A stretch of DNA of 64,000 bases from Octopus bimaculoides (lineage: Eukaryota), in contig NC_068983.1 of assembly GCF_001194135.2 (NCBI RefSeq), positions 152,339,496 through 152,403,495 on the forward strand, in the 5' to 3' direction. Positions 24,491 to 60,910 of this stretch are shown here, piece by piece. The position numbers and the translations under genes were made by a program. Below the pieces are notes generated by a model, which saw only the letters and a program-made list of their open reading frames with translations, was not told the DNA's origin and did not search any database. The first letter of the stretch is position 1; each line of letters starts with the position of its first letter.

Positions 24491-24713
24491 TTAAATGAGA
24501 AAAGGATGAGTTAGATAATGAAGTTCCACATAACGTGGAAGGAAATAGAAGGGTACAGCAGATATGACTTTGATAGTAGTTCTGCTCTGCCTAAGTTGAC
24601 CTGGAGGCTAAACAACTTAAGCAACATCAACAACAACAACCCATTTGATCCTGTAACCGAAAGGATAAAAAAAAAAATTGAAAAACGATCAATAGGCTCT
24701 GACAAGGACTTAC

Positions 24714-25322
24714 CTGCAGACGCTCCAGTAAATAGTTCAGGTCTAAAACATCTGTATAGAAGTCAAGATTAAAGGCAAGTTTACCATACTTTTGAATGAG
24801 ATCAGCTTTTGAGAGGACGTTCACATGAGGGAGACTAACTTGGAGCATTGTGATTAAAGAGGTGAGTAAAACTGAAATGAATTTGCCTGTATCACTGCAG
24901 TAGTGTGCATCTACTAAATGTACAGCTACAAGTCTATAGTCAAGTTTCTGTAAGGCCTCAACAATGTTGTGGACAGCATTGTGGTGAGTGTAGAGTTCAA
25001 CTTGTCCAGGACAATCAAACATAATGTAGTGGTCTTTGGGGATGAGTTTTAGTTTATGAACCAGCCAATCTAGATTTTTATCAAGGTACTCCATGCAATA
25101 TATGAGTCCTCCATTTGGGCCGAGCTTCAGATTCTCCATGACTTCCTCGAGAGTAATCAGTTCTGAGATATTGATGTCTGGTGTGTAAGGAATGCAGTCG
25201 TTGGCAGGATCAAGGTTTACGATTGACACCTTCCGTCCCAAATTTCGCATGAATTCACTCATTCCACGGCAGTAGGTAGTTTTGCCAGAACCAGGTGGTC
25301 CAATAACTAGCTGGGCAAACAT
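24714..25322 (-). CDS. GPN2: GPN-loop GTPase 2, major coding exon (203 codons; gene incomplete at the 3' end)
   Basis: [18 protein letters not shown] (P-loop), NLDPAND, LGPNGGL (GPN loop), [13 protein letters not shown] (G3), VLSKAD (G4), [28 protein letters not shown] fit GPN2 rather than GPN1 or GPN3. Acceptor TAG at 25341-25339, donor CAG|GTAAGT at 24713. Confidence 0.95.
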
Positions 25323-25559
25323 TGTAGTAGTCAGATATCTATAGTTAAAAATCATAATAAAATAAATAAAAAAACAAATTACACAAAGGCAACAGAATTA
25401 CAAATAACAAAGTCTAACTACTAAAGAAAAGAAAAGAAAACACAGATTAATTATCATATGCATATGTTTTTACATATACAAGGCAGAATTTAAACACTAT
25501 TATACTATTGTTTAAATGCTTTCATTATTTAATTCTTTTGTTGTTGTTTTTTTTTTTTT

Positions 25560-29535: not shown

Positions 29536-30510
29536 AATCCAAACTAAAACTAGAACAGCAATGGACCATGATAAAACGATGGCAAGAAAAGCCCCTACAT
29601 GGTAAATACTGGGCTAAACTAAATGCGAAAGAAATAGACAGAGAAAAATCCCAGCAATGGCTGAGAAGCTCAGGACTCAAAGCAGAGACTGAAGGATTNN
29701 NNNNNNNNNNNNNNNNNNNNNNNNNNNNNNNNNNNNNNNNNNNNNNNNNNNNNNNNNNNNNNNNNNNNNNNNNNNNNNNNNNNNNNNNNNNNNNNNNNNN
29801 NNNNNNNNNNNNNNNNNNNNNNNNNNNNNNNNNNNNNNNNNNNNNNNNNNNNNNNNNNNNNNNNNNNNNNNNNNNNNNNNNNNNNNNNNNNNNNNNNNNN
29901 NNNNNNNNNNNNNNNNNNNNNNNNNNNNNNNNNNNNNNNNNNNNNNNNNNNNNNNNNNNNNNNNNNNNNNNNNNNNNNNNNNNNNNNNNNNNNNNNNNNN
30001 NNNNNNNNNNNNNNNNNNNNNNNNNNNNNNNNNNNNNNNNNNNNNNNNNNNNNNNNNNNNNNNNNNNNNNNNNNNNNNNNNNNNNNNNNNNNNNNNNNNN
30101 NNNNNNNNNNNNNNNNNNNNNNNNNNNNNNNNNNNNNNNNNNNNNNNNNNNNNNNNNNNNNNNNNNNNNNNNNNNNNNNNNNNAATGGAAAAACTTTCAA
30201 AATACAAAGACCTGGAAATAGAGATAACTCGAATGTGGAGTCTAAAAACAGAAACAATTCCTATCATAGTAGGTGCCTTAGGTATAATAAAAAAATATTC
30301 AGACAAATACATAACAAAAACACCAGGACTTACAAATATATATAACATACAGAAAATTGCACTACTGGGTACTGCACACATTCTACGCAAAACACTTTCA
30401 ATACAGTAAACATAAGAGCACCACAGCAAATCACAGCACATACCCAAGGCGCACAGAGCTGCGCTCGGTAGTGAAGTGAAAGCACGTTATAAAAATAAAA
30501 CTACTGAACA
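29536..30510 (+). mobile_element. 5'-truncated R4/Dong-clade non-LTR retrotransposon inserted in (TAA)n
   Basis: WQEKPLHGKYW..IDREKSQQWLRSSGLKAETEG and RLE-type EKLSKYKDLEIEITRMW..TIPIIVGALG..TAHILRKTLS*, with no stops in the sequenced parts; (TAA)n on both sides. Confidence 0.85.
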
Positions 30511-30802: not shown

Positions 30803-31058
30803 CAGTTCTATATTTAAGAGATGAGGAATTATTTACATTATTTACATTATTTACATTTGACGGATATTTGTCCTCATCTTGTTTGTTGTTAACACAACGT
30901 TTCGGCTGATATACCCTCCAGCCTTCGTCAGGTGTCTTGGGGAAATTTCGAACCTGGGTTCTCATTCCTAATGATGTTACTATTATTATATTATTATTAT
31001 TACTATTATTAATCAGATCGCTGCCGTGAATCGAACTCGGAACCTTGGGGTTAGTAGC
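30803..31058 (-). mobile_element. Family E element: tRNA head, (AAT)n, intact hammerhead, PLE-like tail
   Basis: B box GAGTTCGATTC next to the gap; homologous to 12787-13021; 3' end has (ATGTAAATA)3 enclosed by a 9-bp inverted repeat AGATGAGGA/TCCTCATCT. Confidence 0.8.
30891..30936 (-). ncRNA. Minimal type I hammerhead ribozyme, all core nucleotides present
   Basis: GACAC-CTGACGA-A-GGCTG-GAGGGTATAT-CAGCC-GAA-ACGT-T-GTGTT: 5-bp helix I (one G.U), 5-bp helix II, palindromic ACGT helix III, GUU site (cut predicted between 30896 and 30895). Confidence 0.75.
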
Positions 31059-32097
31059 NNNNNNNNNNNNNNNNNNNNNNNNNNNNNNNNNNNNNNNNNN
31101 NNNNNNNNNNNNNNNNNNNNNNNNNNNNNNNNNNNNNNNNNNNNNNNNNNNNNNNNNNNNNNNNNNNNNNNNNNNNNNNNNNNNNNNNNNNNNNNNNNNN
31201 NNNNNNNNNNNNNNNNNNNNNNNNNNNNNNNNNNNNNNNNNNNNNNNNNNNNNNNNNNNNNNNNNNNNNNNNNNNNNNNNNNNNNNNNNNNNNNNNNNNN
31301 NNNNNNNNNNNNNNNNNNNNNNNNNNNNNNNNNNNNNNNNNNNNNNNNNNNNNNNNNNNNNNNNNNNNNNNNNNNNNNNNNNNNNNNNNNNNNNNNNNNN
31401 NNNNNNNNNNNNNNNNNNNNNNNNNNNNNNNNNNNNNNNNNNNNNNNNNNNNNNNNNNNNNNNNNNNNNNNNNNNNNNNNNNNNNNNNNNNNNNNCTTAG
31501 TGTGACAAGGCTGGCCCTTTGAAATACTGGTACAACAGAAGAAAGAGTGGGAGAAAGTTGTGGTGAAAAAGTACAGCAGGGTTCGCCACCATCGCCTGCC
31601 GGAGCCTCGTGGAGCTTTGGGTGTTTTCACTCAATAAACACTCACAGCGCCCGGTCTGGGAATCGAAACCGCGATCCTATGACTGCGAGTCCTCTACCCT
31701 AACCACTGGGCCATTGCTCCTCCACACAAATATATTTGGCTTTATCAATATTCATCATAAACGTCGTACTGCTGTTTTGTCAAGGGAGCTAATTCTTCCA
31801 TCAATTATTTCCCTTGCATATAGCGATTTTCTTTTTCTTTTCTACACCATCCATGTATTATTTATTTATTTATTTATTTTTGATTTCACACATTGGGCTA
31901 CAGCCATGCTGGGGTACTGCTTCGAATGCCTTAGTAGAAAAAATTGACCCCAGTACTTATTTCTTTAAGCCTGTACCTTATTCTCTCGGACACTTTTTAC
32001 AGAACCGCTACTTTACCGGGTCGTAAATAAATCAACACCAGCTGTCAAGTTATGGTGGGGCTTATGCACAGACATAATGACAAACTACTCATGCACA

Positions 32098-35317: not shown

Positions 35318-35879
35318 CAGGGTGTTCACAAATTCTGGGTACATGGACTTATTTAAACATGTTGAGAGACAAATTAATACCTCAAATTGAGCGCCTAGAC
35401 GGNNNNNNNNNNNNNNNNNNNNNNNNNNNNNNNNNNNNNNNNNNNNNNNNNNNNNNNNNNNNNNNNNNNNNNNNNNNNNNNNNNNNNNNNNNNNNNNNNN
35501 NNNNNNNNNNNNNNNNNNNNNNNNNNNNNNNNNNNNNNNNNNNNNNNNNNNNNNNNNTGGAATGGTCCCCTCGTTCAGCAGACCTTTCTCCCCTTGACTT
35601 CTTTTTCTGGGGTATGTTGAAAGAGAAAGTTTACTCAATAAAGATTACAGATTTAAACCACATGAGAGAACGCATTACCAGTCAGTGTGCTGAAATTGAT
35701 GGCAATGTAGACTTATTTAATCAAGTTCACCTGAATTTTGCAGGGCGCATCAAGTTATGCATTGAAAATGATGGAAATCATTTTGAAAATATTATTTATT
35801 AACATTATAATTAAATAAAATTGTTTTGTTTTAAAAATATGTGTTAATCCTCATGTACCCAGACTTTGTGGACACCCTG
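35318..35879 (+). mobile_element. Internally deleted Tc1/mariner (maT/DD37D-like) element
   Basis: TIRs CAGGGTGT(T/C)CACAAA(T/G)TCTGGGTACATG, TA TSDs at 35316 and 35880; WSPRSADLSPLDFFFWGMLKEKVY transposase motif. Confidence 0.9.
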
Positions 35880-43082: not shown

Positions 43083-44096
43083 TGTGTATGCGTGTGTGCG
43101 TGTTTGTATTTGTCTCCTACTGCCATTTAACAACTGGTATTACTTTGTTTACGTACCCGTAGCCTAGCAATTCGATAAAAGAGACCGAAAGGTTAAGTAT
43201 TGCTTAACAAGTTCTGGGTTCGATTTGTTCGACTGAACAGTTCAAGGCGGCACCCCAGCACGGTCGCTGTCCAATAGCTGAAACAAGGAAAAGATAAAAG
43301 ACAGGCTAACCGTACAAACATATTGTTTTTGCCGACGCAGATTGGTTAAACACAATTGCCAAAGTAGTTACTCTAATTACAACACAATTTCGTTTCCTCT
43401 CGCAGTTGTCAGAAAAGGAAATCAATCCAACTAATTTCAAGTTTTATCGAACTCACATCAGATATCGTTTACTCCTTTTCTGTTCATAGAGAGAATAGCT
43501 TAAAAGACATAAATACATAATAGCTGTAAGTATAAACTCAGCACTAAATTGGTCTTCTTAATGTGCACAACGGTGCAGGTGTCGTGAAAATTAGACAGAG
43601 CAATTTCGTTCTGTCTGTGCATATTACAAATAGCTGTAAGCTATTATTCTTTCTATGGGCAGAAAAGGTATTAATGAATCAATGAAGTGTGTCCTTGCTA
43701 TAGTAATGACACAATTCGTAAATTCCTACGTTATTAATATAAATATAGATGCATGATAAACAGACGGGCGTCTATCTTTAATAAACATGTTTAACCTAGC
43801 TAGGAAAATACGAAAATTAAACACCAGTGTTATTTAATTTTTCAAGATACTTTCTATCTAAAGTTGCAGCGAGAGCTAGATATGTATGTGTGTGTGTGTG
43901 TGTATGTGTGTGTGTGTGTGTGTGAGTGTGTGTGTGTGTGTGTATGTATGTATATAGTTACTCACACACACACGCACACACGCACGCACACACACACACA
44001 CACGCACACACACACACACACACACGTACTTTTCTTCAACCTCTTTAATTCTCTATATCATTTGTATTCTTTGTAAGTCGGACCATTTTGTGTGTA

Positions 44097-44983
44097 CGAC
44101 GGGGTACCCAAAAGTAAGCAGAAACGTTCTCGGTTGGACAAATTCGTTGTAGTTCATGTTTCCGCCGCTGCCAGCTACTGGATCCAACGTTCAGGTATCA
44201 GTCAGCCGACTGTCGTTGCCCTGTGGGGGGTCATGCTGCCACACTGTCTTTGTTTTGCAGTGCTTCTTCCCTGTTCGTCGATTATTGCGATGGTCGAAAC
44301 GAAGAAACAGCGTCCTTCCGCGAAATTTTGCTTTCTGCTGCGAAAAACGGCGGCCAAAACAGTTGTCATGCTTCAAACGGCTTGCAAGGTCGCTGTTATG
44401 AGCAAGACACCAGTTTCCGAGTAGTTTTCATGCTTTAGGAATGGTCACTTGTCTCTTGAGTACCAAATCTCGTTCAGGGCAACCGTCGACCACCCGAACG
44501 AATGAAAACATCACGAAAATTCATGAGCAGATCTGATGAATTTGTTGATATGACTGGTGCGTCCTGGAGTTCCTACCAACGAATTTCGAGCGATGAATTC
44601 CGAATGAAAAATGTTGCAGTAAATATTTGTGCCTCGCTTGCTCGCGGAAGATCAAAAGGTGTCATGAATGAATGCGTGTCGTGAACTGAAAGAACAGTTG
44701 GAAGTTGATCCGGACCTTTTTTTTTTCGAAGGTCATCACTGATGACGAAAACTGGTGCTGCAGAATTTGTAGATGTGGGGGAGGTGAAGATAAAAACGAC
44801 GGAAGCATTAAAAGGCGTCACTTCGTAAGAGTTCTAGCACTACTTCGAGCAGTGGAAGACGCGTCTGAACCGATGCATTGCTTCAAATGGAGAATACTTT
44901 GAAGACGGTAAGAGTGCAAACATGTAAAACTAAGTGAGTAAAATATTATTGCAAAATTCCGGTTTCTTTTGGGTAGCCCTTCG
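44097..44983 (+). mobile_element. 887-bp internally deleted mariner element
   Basis: TIRs CGA.GGG.TACCCAAAAG.AA.C.GAA with TA TSDs (44095, 44984); frameshifted HTH region, FSKVITDDENW, then a jump to EQWKTRLNRCIASNGEYFE. Confidence 0.85.
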
Positions 44984-58649: not shown

Positions 58650-59000
58650 CCAGTATAATCACCTTTTCAATGGCCAATCTTAAGTGATTGGCCTTTGGTG
58701 AAGGAGGGAGTTCGATATTACTGCCCTCTTTTGAGTCTCCTACCTTGATATTGGTTCGTCTGGGACCTTGGATAGCAAGACGTGAAGTTGTTTCTTAAAA
58801 ACATCTACCCCTACTCCATGAAGATCCCTCAGATGTTCTGACAACGCGTTTAGCTGTGGGCCCTTGAATCTCAAGCTATTGCAGTACATGGTCCTCACTC
58901 TAACTAGGAAAAATGGGAAATTTGCAACGGGTTCTGCTATAGCTCTCGATTCCAATGTCTGGTGCCAACTCCTCCAGTATCTTCCACATTATATCACTAC
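58650..59000 (-). mobile_element. CR1-group LINE 3' fragment
   Basis: CNSLRFKGPQLNALSEHLRDLHGVGVDVFKKQLHVLLSKVPDEP, typical CR1-group C-terminus. Confidence 0.65.
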
Positions 59001-59084
59001 ACACCTCTCTCTGTCTCACTCTCTCTCTGTCTGTCTCTGTCTGTCTCTCTGTTTCTGTCTGTCTGTCTGTCTCTCTCTCGCTAC

Positions 59085-59127
<43 letters not shown>

Positions 59128-59227
59128 NNNNNNNNNNNNNNNNNNNNNNNNNNNNNNNNNNNNNNNNNNNNNNNNNNNNNNNNNNNNNNNNNNNNNNNNN
59201 NNNNNNNNNNNNNNNNNNNNNNNNNNN

Positions 59228-59320
59228 AGCAAACCACAGCACATACCCAAGGCGCACAGAGTTGCGCTCGGTAGTGATGTGAAAGCACGTTATAAAACTA
59301 AAACTACTGAACAATAATAA
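59228..59320 (+). mobile_element. R4/Dong 3' UTR (second copy)
   Basis: About 90-95% identical to 30425-30510, including the GCGCA-6 nt-TGCGC hairpin and (AAT)n tail. Confidence 0.85.
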
Positions 59321-59528
59321 TGATAATAATAATAAAAATAATAATCCTTTCTACTATCGGCACAAGGCCTGAAATTTGGGGAGCAGGGACAAGTCGATGA
59401 CATCGAGCCCGGTGCTCAGCTGGTACTTAATTTATCGACCCCGAAAGCATGAAAGGCAAAATAGACCTCGACAGAATTTGAACTCAGAACATAGCGACGT
59501 GCAAAATAACGCGAAGCATTTTTCCGGT

Positions 59529-59560
<32 letters not shown>

Positions 59561-59564
<4 letters not shown>

Positions 59565-60081
59565 GAAGAGTGCCATTTGTTATCTAGTGAACGATATTTC
59601 GACATCTCGTGTGTCTTCAACTGGTTCAAAAAATAAATTTGTCAATCTACTTCATTTTGGTTAATATAGAAAGGATTGAGGTAACTCCTCCTGAAGATAT
59701 AGAGTCAAAATTAAAAGAAGAGTGCCATTTGTTATCTAGTGAACGATATTTCGACATCTCGTGTGTCTTCAACTGGTTCAAANNNNNNNNNNNNNNNNNN
59801 NNNNNNAAAATGAAGTAGATTGACAAATTTATTTTTTGAACCAGTTGAAGACACACGAGATGTCGAAATATCGTTCACTAGATAACAAATGGCACTCTTC
59901 TTTTAATTTTGACTCTATATCTTCAGGAGGAGTTACCTCAATCCTTTCTATATTAACCAAAATGAAGTAGATTGACAAATTTATTTTTTGAACCAGTTGA
60001 AGACACACGAGATGTCGAAATATCGTTCACTAGATAAATGGCACTCTTCTTTTAATTTTGACTCTATATCTTCCTTTCTAT

Positions 60082-60086
<5 letters not shown>
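59561..60086. repeat. 152-bp tandem repeat in a head-to-head inverted array, embedded in (TAA)n
   Basis: Period 152 (59561/59713; 59807/59959); the right arm is the reverse complement of the left arm units; 24 N at the centre. Confidence 0.9.
59837..59877 (+). ncRNA. Hammerhead-like fold with non-canonical core (identical copies at 59989-60029 +, 59588-59628 -, 59740-59780 -)
   Basis: TGAAC-CAGTTGA-A-GACA-CACGAGA-TGTC-GAA-ATAT-C-GTTCA: perfect 5-bp helix I, 4-bp helix II, palindromic ATAT, AUC site; core differs from CUGANGA at positions 4 and 6. Confidence 0.55.
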
Positions 60087-60137
<51 letters not shown>

Positions 60138-60279
60138 TAATAATAATGGTTTCAAATCAAATTTTGGCCCAAGGCCAGCAATTTTGAGGAGGAATTAGTC
60201 GATTAGATGGACCCCTGTGTTCAGTTGGTGCTTATGTTATCAACCCCGAAAGGATGAAAGGTTAAAACACATGGGTAGT

Positions 60280-60530
60280 AATCGTTCTTACATGGACAAC
60301 GCTCTTTTCAATACGTGTGAAGTATCAGTTAAAGCATTTCTTGCAGGGGTGGTTAGCCAGGAATTATTCTCAAATAATTTTCAGTTCCTTTTTTAATCAT
60401 TCCTAGTGCTCCTACAGTCACTGGTATTGTAACTGTCTTGAGATGTTTTCAATTTTAATGAGCAAATCTTCATATTTTCTCAGTTTATCAATTTTTTTTT
60501 GCTGAGATCACAATGAATATTCATGTCAAG
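60280..60530 (-). mobile_element. Old R4/Dong-like 3' end
   Basis: KLRKYEDLLIKI..LKTVTIPVTVGALGMIKKGTENYLRIIPG..TSHVLKRALSM parallels the 30185-30409 peptide. Confidence 0.65.
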
Positions 60531-60759
60531 AATAATAATAGTTTCAAATTTATGAACAATGCCAACAATCTCAGGCAGGGATAAGTCAATTACATCAATC
60601 CCACTGTTCGACCGGTTCGGTTTGGATACCGAAAGGATGAAAGATAAAGTCGTTAAAAATAAGAATAAGAAAAGATTTCGGGCGCAATATAATTTGATTC
60701 AATCCACCATTTAATATTAGCCCATGAACATACGTAACCTGAAACTTCTTAATGGAAAG

Positions 60760-60910
60760 AAAGAAACACTTTTCTCAATCCCCTGATTTGTATGAGAAAA
60801 CTGGGAGGCCTTTCCGTTCTCGAGTGACCAATTACAAACAGCTGCTAGATATCCTTCAAAATCATGTTGGTAATGTAGATTCACATGAACGACTCTGCAA
60901 ACAATGGTGA
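60760..60910 (+). mobile_element. Possible PLE GIY-YIG endonuclease remnant
   Basis: LYEKTGRPFRSRVTNYKQLLDILQNHVGNVDSHERLC resembles YIGxTGRxxxxRxxxHxxxI; short and degraded. Confidence 0.35.

What the first reader, a model, noticed from the sequence alone, without database searches (positions are those of the whole stretch)
59561..60086. 152-bp tandem repeat with one hammerhead-like fold per unit: candidate retrozyme with an unusual CAGUUGA core
Seen: four identical copies of TGAAC-CAGTTGA-A-GACA-(7)-TGTC-GAA-ATAT-C-GTTCA, one per 152-bp unit. Both helices, GAA, the palindrome and the NUH site are in exact hammerhead register, matching the canonical motif at 30891-30936. Established: short tandem repeats with type I hammerheads and palindromic helix III (newt satellite 2, Schistosoma Sm-alpha, metazoan retrozymes) self-cleave, often as dimers, into monomers that can circularise. 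Inference: this is such an element, and U4A plus A6U is either a new active core variant or a fixed inactivation that still amplified. The units are essentially identical, so the amplification is recent.
Basis: partly seen in the sequence, partly recalled or inferred. Interest (0 to 1): 0.85.

Follow-up and report, generated by a model that had tools for sequence, protein, structure and literature searches.

The report
Inverted octopus repeat with broken hammerhead motif
A short 152-bp repeat sits in an octopus microsatellite as two mirror-image arms around an assembly gap; each unit carries a motif shaped like the minimal hammerhead ribozymes of Penelope-like retroelements, but two essential catalytic bases are changed, so it is most likely a dead ribozyme relic.

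Summary
The 41-nt motif exists exactly as described and occurs four times. They are not four tandem copies. Two lie on the minus strand (59588, 59740) and two on the plus strand (59837, 59989), in two reverse-complementary arms that meet at the 24-N gap. Each arm holds fewer than two 152-bp units. The window is Octopus DNA, and no further copy of the unit was found anywhere I could search.

The motif aligns column for column with canonical-core minimal type-I hammerheads from the same window, from O. vulgaris and from a Penelope-like element. It shares their extra base after A9, the G10.1-C11.1 pair, the palindromic helix III and a 5-bp helix I. Its U-turn reads CAGU instead of CUGA. Published saturation mutagenesis found all single and double mutants there poorly active, apart from the C3/G8 swap.

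Statistical support is borderline: a chance rate of 0.005 to 0.12 per window, depending on the null. Rfam finds nothing, but it also misses the canonical controls.

Best reading: one insertion of a short retrozyme-like or Penelope-derived repeat with an inactive ribozyme relic. A chance look-alike remains a serious rival. Modest interest.

The parts
59530..59562 (.). Left part of the (TAA)n tract that the element interrupts.
   Evidence: TRF: period 3, 11 copies, 100% matches; sequence read.
59560..59658 (-). Left arm, outer partial unit (unit positions 1-99 read on the minus strand). It joins the microsatellite at CTTCTTTTA|TTATTA.
   Evidence: 100% identical to the reference unit over 99 nt.
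59659..59782 (-). Left arm, inner unit (unit positions 29-152 on the minus strand). It runs into the gap.
   Evidence: 124 nt, 100% identical to the reference unit.
59783..59806 (.). Assembly gap at the centre of symmetry of the inverted repeat.
   Evidence: About 28 nt are needed to complete the left unit, against 24 N written.
59807..59958 (+). Right arm, inner complete 152-bp unit (the reference unit; GC 32%).
59959..60086 (+). Right arm, outer unit with a 3-bp and a 19-bp deletion. It joins the microsatellite at ATATTAA|TAATAA.
   Evidence: alignment; families D2, D5 and D6.
59588..59628 (-). Hammerhead-like motif, copy 1 (minus strand).
   Evidence: Descriptor scan; covariance models give 19.2 and 15.2 bits.
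59740..59780 (-). Hammerhead-like motif, copy 2 (minus strand).
59837..59877 (+). Hammerhead-like motif, copy 3. Layout: helix I 59837-41/59873-77; box CAGUUGA 59842-48; extra A 59849; helix II 59850-53/59861-64; GAA 59865-67; AUAU 59868-71; C17 at 59872.
59989..60029 (+). Hammerhead-like motif, copy 4 (plus strand).
60080..60147 (.). Right part of the interrupted (TAA)n/(ATA)n tract.
   Evidence: TRF: period 3, 22.7 copies.
59346..59527 (+). SINE-like repeat copy to the left of the target microsatellite.
   Evidence: Direct repeat D4: 59381-59461 against 60186-60266, 78% identity; sequence.
60148..60270 (+). SINE-like repeat copy to the right of the target microsatellite.
   Evidence: (D4).

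Best explanation
The locus is a roughly 0.55-kb insertion in the (TAA)n tract between two same-orientation SINE-like copies of an Octopus genome.

It consists of two head-to-head inverted arms. With the motif strand taken as sense, the 5' ends meet at the centre. Each arm is a more-than-unit-length stretch of an AT-rich 152-bp repeat.

Each unit carries a relic of a minimal type-I hammerhead of the kind found in Penelope-like elements and animal non-LTR retrozymes. The scaffold is intact, but the catalytic U-turn is changed from CUGA to CAGU and helix III from ACGU to AUAU. I therefore predict that the ribozyme does not self-cleave.

Shown here: the anatomy, the register, the core changes, the junctions and the lack of other copies.

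Inferred:
- The element arrived in one event as multimeric cDNA, copied from a multimeric or circular RNA template by a Penelope-like reverse transcriptase.
- Priming came from both nicked ends of the microsatellite. That would explain the inverted arms and the two different junction positions (unit positions 99 and about 150), each at a TAA/TTAA microhomology.
- The four identical motifs then reflect one source RNA, not repeated amplification.
- If the whole locus is transcribed, it would fold into a perfect hairpin of more than 200 bp rather than into hammerheads.
For: - Inverted arms of 203 nt at 100% complementarity, with 152-bp spacing inside each arm.
- Only this gap of 21 has mirror-image flanks, so this is not a general habit of the assembler.
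- The arms differ at their outer ends, so they are not one contig used twice.
- Column-for-column alignment with four canonical-core min-HHRs. The features listed in PMC4209133 are all present: helix I of 4-5 bp, a base between 9 and 10.1, G10.1-C11.1, and palindromic 15.2-16.2. 'Dual motifs on opposite strands 100-700 bp apart' are also described there.
- The candidate is the best non-family hit in the window under both covariance models: 19.2 bits at E about 0.008, and 15.2 bits at E about 0.12.
- Shuffle expectation is 0.0055 per window.
- Real min-HHR families, intact and decayed in about equal numbers, occur in this window and in O. vulgaris.
- A gap-free, diverged head-to-head pair of a hammerhead-bearing SINE lies at 12965-13076. 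Such inverted pairs are therefore real in this genome.
- Penelope-like elements make tandem and inverted insertions, prefer microsatellites and upset short-read assemblies (PMC8557442). They are present in Octopus (PMC13282606).
- Retrozyme units span 51-972 bp, and most families have at most 7 units.
- Inactivity: U-turn double mutants are poorly active (PMC9901934). AUAU helix III is +0.2 against -3.1 kcal/mol. The dimer-like fold is -1.5 against an MFE of -47.7 kcal/mol. The whole-locus hairpin is -387 kcal/mol.
Against: - Significance is borderline. The unbiased octopus-only model gives E about 0.12. With decoy cores, 7% of decoys give at least one hit (at most 2 mismatches) per 130 kb of real octopus DNA.
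- Fold energies of the motif and of the unit are no better than shuffles (z -0.39 and -0.23).
- Outside the motif, the unit has no sequence similarity to the two octopus min-HHR families.
- No second copy of the unit was found in 64 kb plus 72.7 kb of octopus DNA, in metagenome contigs or among predicted proteins. Dispersal, a hallmark of a mobile element, is therefore unshown.
- No reverse transcriptase or GIY-YIG ORF lies nearby.
- No target-site duplication can be read inside a microsatellite.
- The centre of the structure is unsequenced.
Confidence: 0.45

Rival explanations
1. Chance look-alike. The 152-bp unit is an ordinary low-copy local duplication, or a short satellite-like array of the dispersed kind that mobile elements carry in other molluscs. 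It was folded into a palindrome by replication template switching in an AT-rich microsatellite. The hammerhead register is a coincidence in AT-rich DNA.
For: - The unbiased covariance model gives only E about 0.12.
- With decoy cores, 7% of decoys give at least one hit per 130 kb.
- Two of the six specified core bases are wrong.
- Fold z-scores are near zero.
- There is no homology to known octopus min-HHR families outside the motif.
- No other copies were found.
- Short dispersed satellite-like arrays are documented in the oyster Crassostrea gigas (PMC7492417, title and abstract).
Against: - The look-alike falls inside the only long-period repeat of the window, which covers about 1% of its bases. 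That makes the joint coincidence much rarer than the per-window rates.
- Three independent min-HHR hallmarks are all present: the extra base after A9, G10.1-C11.1 and a palindromic helix III.
- With those hallmarks required, 0 of 2000 shuffles match.
Confidence: 0.33
2. Assembly artefact. The inverted arrangement is not real. The 555-bp contig between the gaps at 59128-59227 and 59783-59806 is misplaced or belongs to a second locus, and the true structure is a simple array, or two separate arrays each abutting a (TAA)n tract.
For: - This is a draft short-read scaffold with 21 gaps in 64 kb.
- The symmetry centre lies exactly in a gap.
- The arms are 100% identical over 203 nt, as expected if repeats were collapsed.
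- Tandem and inverted retroelement insertions are known to disturb short-read assemblies (PMC8557442).
Against: - Only 1 of 21 gaps shows mirror flanks.
- The two arms end differently: the unit junctions are at positions 99 and about 150, and the 3-bp deletion is present only on the right.
- Flipping the left contig still does not give one continuous direct array, because its unit stretch would then face the wrong gap.
- The SINE-like copies on both sides are in the same orientation (D4).
Confidence: 0.15
3. CAGUUGA is a new, catalytically competent hammerhead core, and the element is an active retrozyme that self-cleaves as a dimer into a 152-nt RNA that circularises.
For: - The scaffold is in perfect register, with H17 = C.
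- All four copies keep the same core, so the source RNA already had it.
- Canonical min-HHRs are themselves barely active in vitro and may need cofactors (PMC4209133). In vitro rules may therefore not transfer fully.
Against: - All single and double U-turn mutants were poorly active in saturation pairwise mutagenesis, apart from the C3/G8 swap (PMC9901934).
- Helix III AUAU is unstable (+0.2 kcal/mol).
- The hammerhead helices are absent from the MFE of the 280-nt arm.
- Only two units lie in tandem per arm, and no other copies were found.
Confidence: 0.03

Closest known systems
Minimal hammerheads (min-HHR) of metazoan Penelope-like elements (Cervera & de la Pena 2014, PMC4209133)
   Same: - Type-I topology.
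- Helix I of 5 bp.
- An unpaired base between A9 and 10.1.
- A G10.1-C11.1 pair.
- No real helix III, only the palindromic A-N-N'-U.
- Motifs found close together on opposite strands.
- Elements that insert as tandem or inverted copies into microsatellites.
   Different: - The core reads CAGUUGA, not CUGANGA (U4A, A6U).
- Helix II has 4 bp rather than the usual 6-8.
- Helix III is AUAU rather than ACGU.
- No pLTR or RT-EN ORF context.
- No family of covarying copies has been shown.
Animal non-LTR retrozymes (Cervera & de la Pena 2020, PMC7229834; Li et al. 2026 preprint, 10.64898/2026.07.22.740005)
   Same: - A short, AT-rich, non-coding unit (152 bp, GC 32%) repeated head to tail, with one type-I hammerhead-shaped motif per unit.
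- Published unit sizes are 150-450 bp (51-972 in the preprint), and most families have few units per array.
- Penelope-like elements co-occur in the genome.
   Different: - Fewer than two units per arm.
- The arms are inverted.
- The ribozyme core is broken.
- Dispersed copies, transcripts and circular RNA are all unshown.
Newt satellite 2 and Schistosoma Sm-alpha hammerheads
   Same: Type-I hammerheads in repeated DNA with a weak helix III. The newt type is reported to cleave efficiently only as a dimer (as summarised in PMC7229834).
   Different: - Those have intact CUGANGA cores and loop 1 / loop 2 tertiary contacts.
- They occur in thousands of copies.
- Rfam-type models are built on such canonical hammerheads, and nothing here reaches them.
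Octopus hammerhead-bearing tRNA-derived SINE in the same window (30891-30936 minus strand; 12837-12877 minus strand)
   Same: Same motif architecture, including the extra A and the 4-nt palindrome. This family also occurs as a head-to-head inverted pair (12965-13076).
   Different: - It has an intact core (CUGACGA), a 5-bp helix II with a 10-nt loop and a tRNA-like head.
- It has no sequence similarity to the 152-bp unit outside the motif.
Short satellite-like arrays carried by non-autonomous mobile elements in molluscs (Crassostrea gigas, PMC7492417)
   Same: A short array of tandem monomers outside heterochromatin, in a mollusc. That paper describes short satDNA-like arrays dispersed through the oyster genome (title and abstract only).
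   Different: - Those arrays sit inside Helentron-derived elements with defined flanks, and no such flanks are seen here.
- The element ends here are not terminal inverted repeats.
- I did not test for Helitron features.

Membership tests
Hammerhead ribozyme | Conserved box C3-U4-G5-A6-N7-G8-A9 | tested here: not met
   The sequence is C-A-G-U-U-G-A, so U4 and A6 are replaced. No CUGANGA is available in any other register of the motif.
Hammerhead ribozyme | G12-A13-A14, the A15.1-U16.1 pair, and H17 (not G) at the cleavage site | tested here: met
   GAA 59865-67, A59868...U59871, C59872.
Hammerhead ribozyme | Three helices around the core in the correct order and register | tested here: inconclusive
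   Helix I (5 bp) and helix II (4 bp) are in register, and they are the MFE of the 42-nt motif, but z = -0.39. Helix III exists only as a 4-nt AUAU palindrome that needs a partner copy; the duplex is +0.2 kcal/mol. The helices are lost in the MFE of the 280-nt arm.
Hammerhead ribozyme | Match to curated covariance models (Rfam hammerhead families) | tested here: inconclusive
   No hit at gathering score or at E<=10. The canonical-core controls at 30891 and in L014 are also missed, so this negative result carries little weight.
Hammerhead ribozyme | Site-specific self-cleavage | not testable with these tools
   This needs transcription assays. Published pairwise mutagenesis predicts low activity for U-turn double mutants (PMC9901934).
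Hammerhead ribozyme | Compensatory covariation in the helices among homologues | not testable with these tools
   The four copies are identical, and no other copy was retrievable.
PLE-type min-HHR | [quoted passage not shown] | tested here: met
   A59849. The feature is defined in PMC4209133.
PLE-type min-HHR | G10.1-C11.1 closing pair of helix II | tested here: met
   G59850 pairs with C59864.
PLE-type min-HHR | Palindromic 15.2-16.2 and a short helix I (4-5 bp) | tested here: met
   AUAU at 59868-71; helix I UGAAC/GUUCA.
PLE-type min-HHR | Significant score against a model built from bona fide min-HHRs | tested here: inconclusive
   Model R1 gives 19.2 bits, E about 0.008, but it is biased because L014 was found with a pattern taken from the candidate. 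Model R2, built from octopus sequences only, gives 15.2 bits, E about 0.12. The candidate is the best non-family hit in both.
PLE-type min-HHR | Location in a pseudo-LTR flanking an RT/GIY-YIG ORF, or recognisable as a truncated PLE | tested here: not met
   No such ORF appears in the ORF lists. Pfam finds nothing in 10 neighbouring ORFs. Most published min-HHRs are also solo, so this weakens the case without excluding it.
Animal non-LTR retrozyme | Head-to-tail tandem units of a few hundred bp or less with low GC | tested here: met
   152-bp period, GC 32%. However, there are only about 1.5 to 1.85 units per arm, and the arms are inverted.
Animal non-LTR retrozyme | One intact type-I hammerhead per unit | tested here: not met
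   The core is CAGUUGA in all four copies.
Animal non-LTR retrozyme | Many dispersed genomic copies (a mobile family) | tested here: inconclusive
   None in the rest of the window or in 72.7 kb of O. vulgaris. No octopus genome could be searched.
Animal non-LTR retrozyme | Unit-length linear and circular RNAs | not testable with these tools
   No transcriptome data were available.
Animal non-LTR retrozyme | Co-occurrence with Penelope-like elements in the genome | tested here: met
   The window is Octopus. PLEs are annotated in O. vulgaris (PMC13282606).
Foldback / MITE DNA transposon | Terminal inverted repeats at both ends and a defined target-site duplication | tested here: not met
   The outer ends differ: the left end is AAGAAGAGTGCC (unit position 99), and the reverse complement of the right end is TTAATATAGAAAGG (unit position about 150). 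A TSD cannot be read inside (TAA)n.

The most novel reading that the evidence does not exclude
CAGUUGA is a naturally occurring, functional alternative hammerhead core, in which the U-turn is replaced. It operates in a minimal dimeric ribozyme of an octopus retrozyme that produces a 152-nt circular RNA.

A weaker but still novel variant: a ribozyme-dead retrozyme that was nevertheless mobilised. That would show that self-cleavage is dispensable for this class of retroelement.
Probability: 0.04. Interest if true: 0.75.

Novelty: new member of a known kind. Interest (0 to 1): 0.3.

Why it matters
If the motif is a true hammerhead relic, the locus is a compact example of how Penelope-type elements or retrozymes insert. 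It would show more-than-unit copies, an inverted partner and a microsatellite target. It would also show that the source RNA already carried a dead ribozyme, which bears on whether self-cleavage is needed for mobilisation. That question is left open in PMC8557442.

In practice it is a single, unreplicated locus in a draft assembly, so its value is mainly as a pointer. Octopus genomes contain min-HHR families that Rfam does not detect. One of them sits in a tRNA-derived SINE, and that family deserves attention more than this degenerate copy does.

Tried and rejected
- **Rfam, gathering and E<=10.** No hammerhead hit anywhere, including the canonical-core controls. Rejected as evidence either way.
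- **Tandem Repeats Finder.** It does not list the 152-bp period, which is consistent with fewer than two units per arm.
- **Metagenome scan with CCNGNTGAAGACA-N7-TGTCGAAA.** It gave 32 hits, and none extends beyond the pattern. One hit (L014) is a real PLE-type hammerhead next to an RT-like ORF and was used as a comparator.
- **Peptide search with the 59-aa ORF that spans a unit.** No homologue, so no route to other copies.
- **O. vulgaris locus fetched through GPN2.** It reaches only to about window position 29-31 kb, not the element, and contains no copy of the unit.
- **tRNA scan.** Nothing found.
- **Pfam on 10 neighbouring ORFs.** Nothing found.
- **Foldback or MITE reading.** Rejected because the ends are not inverted repeats of each other.
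- **Systematic assembler artefact.** Rejected because 20 of 21 gaps lack mirror flanks.
- **Search for a canonical CUGANGA elsewhere in the unit.** The minus strand has CUGAAGA at 59691-59697, but it is not followed by a helix II and GAAA (read by eye).
Full report
**What is at the coordinates**

Reading 59000-60800 shows the 41-nt string TGAAC-CAGTTGA-A-GACA-CACGAGA-TGTC-GAA-ATAT-C-GTTCA twice on the plus strand (59837-59877, 59989-60029). Its reverse complement occurs twice to the left of the gap (59588-59628, 59740-59780). My own descriptor scan confirms all four.

The repeat finder shows that 59580-59782 and 59835-60037 are 203-nt arms, 100% complementary. Inside each arm the copies are spaced 152 bp apart. 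The locus is therefore not a four-unit tandem array. It is two inverted arms, each with fewer than two units. Tandem Repeats Finder lists no 152-bp array.

**The unit map**

- Right arm: one full unit (59807-59958), then a unit with a 3-bp and a 19-bp deletion (59959-60086).
- Left arm, read on the minus strand: unit positions 29-152 (59782 down to 59659), then positions 1-99 (59658 down to 59560).

**The gap**

The program's note asked that the gap be tested first.

- The flanks are mirror images, not a continuation of one array.
- The left arm enters the gap at unit position 29, and the right arm leaves it at position 1. About 28 nt are missing, against 24 N written.
- The simplest fill is a palindrome centred in the gap. 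Extra whole units cannot be excluded.
- Of the 21 gaps in the window, only this one has inverted-duplicate flanks. This is not a general habit of the assembler. More likely the palindrome caused the gap.
- The arms also differ at their outer ends, so they are not one contig used twice.

**Context**

The element interrupts a (TAA)n tract (59530-59562 and 60080-60147). That tract lies between two same-orientation copies of a SINE-like repeat (59346-59527 and 60148-60270; 78% identity over 81 nt).

Both junctions fall at TAA/TTAA-like microhomology: CTTCTTTTA|TTATTA on the left arm's sense strand, and ATATTAA|TAATAA on the right. The outer ends are not inverted repeats of each other, which argues against a foldback or MITE DNA transposon.

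No reverse-transcriptase or endonuclease ORF lies nearby.

**Organism**

- An exon at 24627-25355 (minus strand) encodes GPN-loop GTPase 2 (Pfam ATP_bind_1, 3e-72). It is 99% identical to the Octopus vulgaris protein.
- The DNA is 85-94% identical to O. vulgaris chromosome OX597816.1.
- The window is therefore from a sister Octopus species, in a draft assembly with 21 gaps.

**Is it a hammerhead?**

Rfam finds nothing at the gathering score or at E<=10. It also misses the perfect-core motif at 30891-30936 and a perfect-core motif next to an RT-like ORF in metagenome contig L014. The Rfam negative is therefore uninformative for this class.

The relevant class is the 'min-HHR' of Penelope-like elements. 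Cervera & de la Pena (PMC4209133) describe it as follows:

- helix I of 4-5 bp;
- a conserved G10.1-C11.1 pair;
- palindromic 15.2-16.2 with no real helix III;
- action as dimers, with low activity in vitro;
- pairs of motifs 100-700 bp apart on opposite strands.

The candidate has every one of these scaffold features. It aligns column for column with four canonical examples. It departs in three respects:

- the box reads CAGUUGA instead of CUGANGA (U4A, A6U);
- helix III is AUAU instead of ACGU;
- helix II has 4 bp.

**Chance**

| Null model | Result |
|---|---|
| 2000 dinucleotide shuffles, at most 2 core mismatches | 0.0055 hits per window |
| Same shuffles, also requiring the extra base and G10.1-C11.1 | 0 of 2000 |
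| 539 decoy cores of the same composition, real octopus DNA (window plus L033) | 7% of decoys give at least one hit per 130 kb |
| Covariance model R1, four canonical motifs | 19.2 bits, E about 0.008 |
| Covariance model R2, octopus motifs only | 15.2 bits, E about 0.12 |

- R1 is biased. One of its four sequences, L014, was retrieved with a pattern taken from the candidate.
- In both models the candidate is the best hit outside the two real families.
- The motif's fold energy is unremarkable (z = -0.39), and so is the unit's (z = -0.23).
- On its own the resemblance is borderline. That it falls inside the only long-period repeat of the window, about 1% of its bases, makes the joint coincidence considerably less likely.

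**Would it cleave?**

- Comprehensive single and pairwise mutagenesis of a hammerhead found low activity for all mutants in the CUGA U-turn. There was no rescue by a second mutation, apart from the C3/G8 pair swap (PMC9901934). U4A+A6U is such a double mutant.
- The trans helix III of a dimer would be four A-U pairs: +0.2 kcal/mol, against -3.1 for ACGU.
- In the 280-nt arm the hammerhead helices are not in the MFE (-47.7 kcal/mol). A dimer-like conformation scores -1.5 kcal/mol.
- A transcript of the whole locus would form a perfect hairpin of more than 200 bp (-387 kcal/mol).
- I therefore predict no self-cleavage.

**Other copies**

I found none:

- in the rest of the window;
- in 72.7 kb of O. 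vulgaris;
- among 32 metagenome pattern hits, all chance matches except the L014 hammerhead;
- among predicted proteins.

No octopus genome could be searched at the DNA level.

**Background from the same genomes**

The covariance models revealed two real min-HHR families.

- **Type A:** ...CAC-CUGAYGA-A-GGCUG-N10-CAGCC-GAA-ACGU-U-GUGUU.
  - It occurs at window 30891-30936 (intact) and 12837-12877 (decayed), and at O. vulgaris L033 20497-20542 and 33029-33071.
  - It lies downstream of a tRNA-like head and an (AAT)n tract, so it sits in a tRNA-derived SINE.
- **Type B:** UGUUW-CUGAAGA-A-GAGC-UKU-GCUC-GAA-ACGU-A-AAAC.
  - It occurs at window 12174-12210, with an orthologue at L033 21010-21046 and a decayed copy at L033 58227-58263.

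Intact and decayed copies are about equally frequent, so decayed hammerheads are an expected component of this genome.

At 12965-13076, two tRNA-like heads of the type-A SINE form a zero-spacer head-to-head pair inside a gap-free contig. They are 88% complementary. Inverted pairs of hammerhead-bearing retroelements are therefore real here.

**Mechanism proposed**

The steps below are inferred, not shown.

- Penelope-like elements are reported to insert as partial tandems with an adjacent inverted copy, to prefer microsatellites and to upset short-read assemblies (PMC8557442).
- Animal retrozymes are proposed to be their non-autonomous derivatives, copied as multimers from circular or multimeric RNA (PMC7229834; preprint 10.64898/2026.07.22.740005).
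- PLEs are present in Octopus (PMC13282606).
- Several features here fit one insertion event of a short PLE-dependent element, primed from both nicked ends of the (TAA)n target: head-to-head arms, more-than-unit length, two different junction positions at microhomologies, and identical units.
- The source RNA would already have carried the mutated core.

**Verdict**

| Question | Verdict |
|---|---|
| Observation | partly confirmed |

| Reading | Probability |
|---|---|
| Dead min-HHR relic in a retrozyme-like or PLE-derived insertion | about 0.45 |
| Chance look-alike in an unrelated local repeat | about 0.33 |
| Inverted arrangement is an assembly artefact | about 0.15 |
| New active core | about 0.03 |

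At best this is a new, degenerate member of a known kind. Interest is modest.

Noticed in passing
window 30891-30936 (-), with tRNA-like head up to the gap at 31059; also 12837-12877 (-) and L033 20497-20542 (-), 33029-33071 (-): A tRNA-derived SINE family of Octopus carries a canonical-core minimal type-I hammerhead: GACAC-CUGACGA-A-GGCUG-N10-CAGCC-GAA-ACGU-U-GUGUU. It resembles the SINE-plus-hammerhead layout of Schistosoma Sm-alpha. Rfam 15 does not detect it. Full-text searches for octopus plus hammerhead ribozyme, and of an O. vulgaris repeat-annotation paper, found no description of it.
   Followed up: partly
window 12174-12210 (+); L033 21010-21046 (-); L033 58227-58263 (+): A second min-HHR family (CUGAAGA-A-GAGC-UKU-GCUC-GAA-ACGU). 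The window copy has an orthologue in O. vulgaris with an intact core and a better helix I (GUUU/AAAC), so the motif has been retained since the two species split.
   Followed up: partly
window 12965-13076: A zero-spacer head-to-head inverted pair of the SINE's tRNA-like heads. The arms are 56 nt and 88% complementary, inside a gap-free contig. Relative to O. vulgaris, the segment 12789-13021 is inverted.
   Followed up: partly
L014 4090-4140 (-) and ORF 127-1983 (-): A metagenome contig (Ga0209562_1014722) holds a canonical min-HHR (GUCACAC-CUGAUGA-A-GACA-N7-UGUC-GAA-ACGU-U-GUGUGAU). It lies upstream of a 522-aa ORF with no Pfam match and a 618-aa RT-like ORF (weak RVT_1 hit, below the Pfam cut-off; the YLLPKIHK...RPIVS motif recalls Penelope-like RTs from memory). 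It is probably a eukaryotic Penelope-like element in a metagenome.
   Followed up: partly
window 24627-25355 (-): First coding exon of GPN-loop GTPase 2 (Pfam ATP_bind_1, 3e-72), 99% identical to O. vulgaris. In O. vulgaris the gene spans 52.7 kb.
   Followed up: yes
window 35359-35802 (+) and 44092-44424 (+): ORF fragments that look like mariner/Tc1 transposase, a C-terminal DDE part and an N-terminal helix-turn-helix part. This is judged by eye only and was not scanned.
   Followed up: no
window 29568-29698 (+): An ORF fragment (MIKRWQEKPLHGKYW...) that resembles the C-terminal part of non-LTR retrotransposon ORF2 proteins. It is cut by the gap at 29699. Judged by eye only.
   Followed up: no
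whole window: There are 21 assembly gaps in 64 kb (7138 N in total), many of them next to microsatellites. This is a draft short-read scaffold, so distances and small-contig placements should be treated with care.
   Followed up: yes
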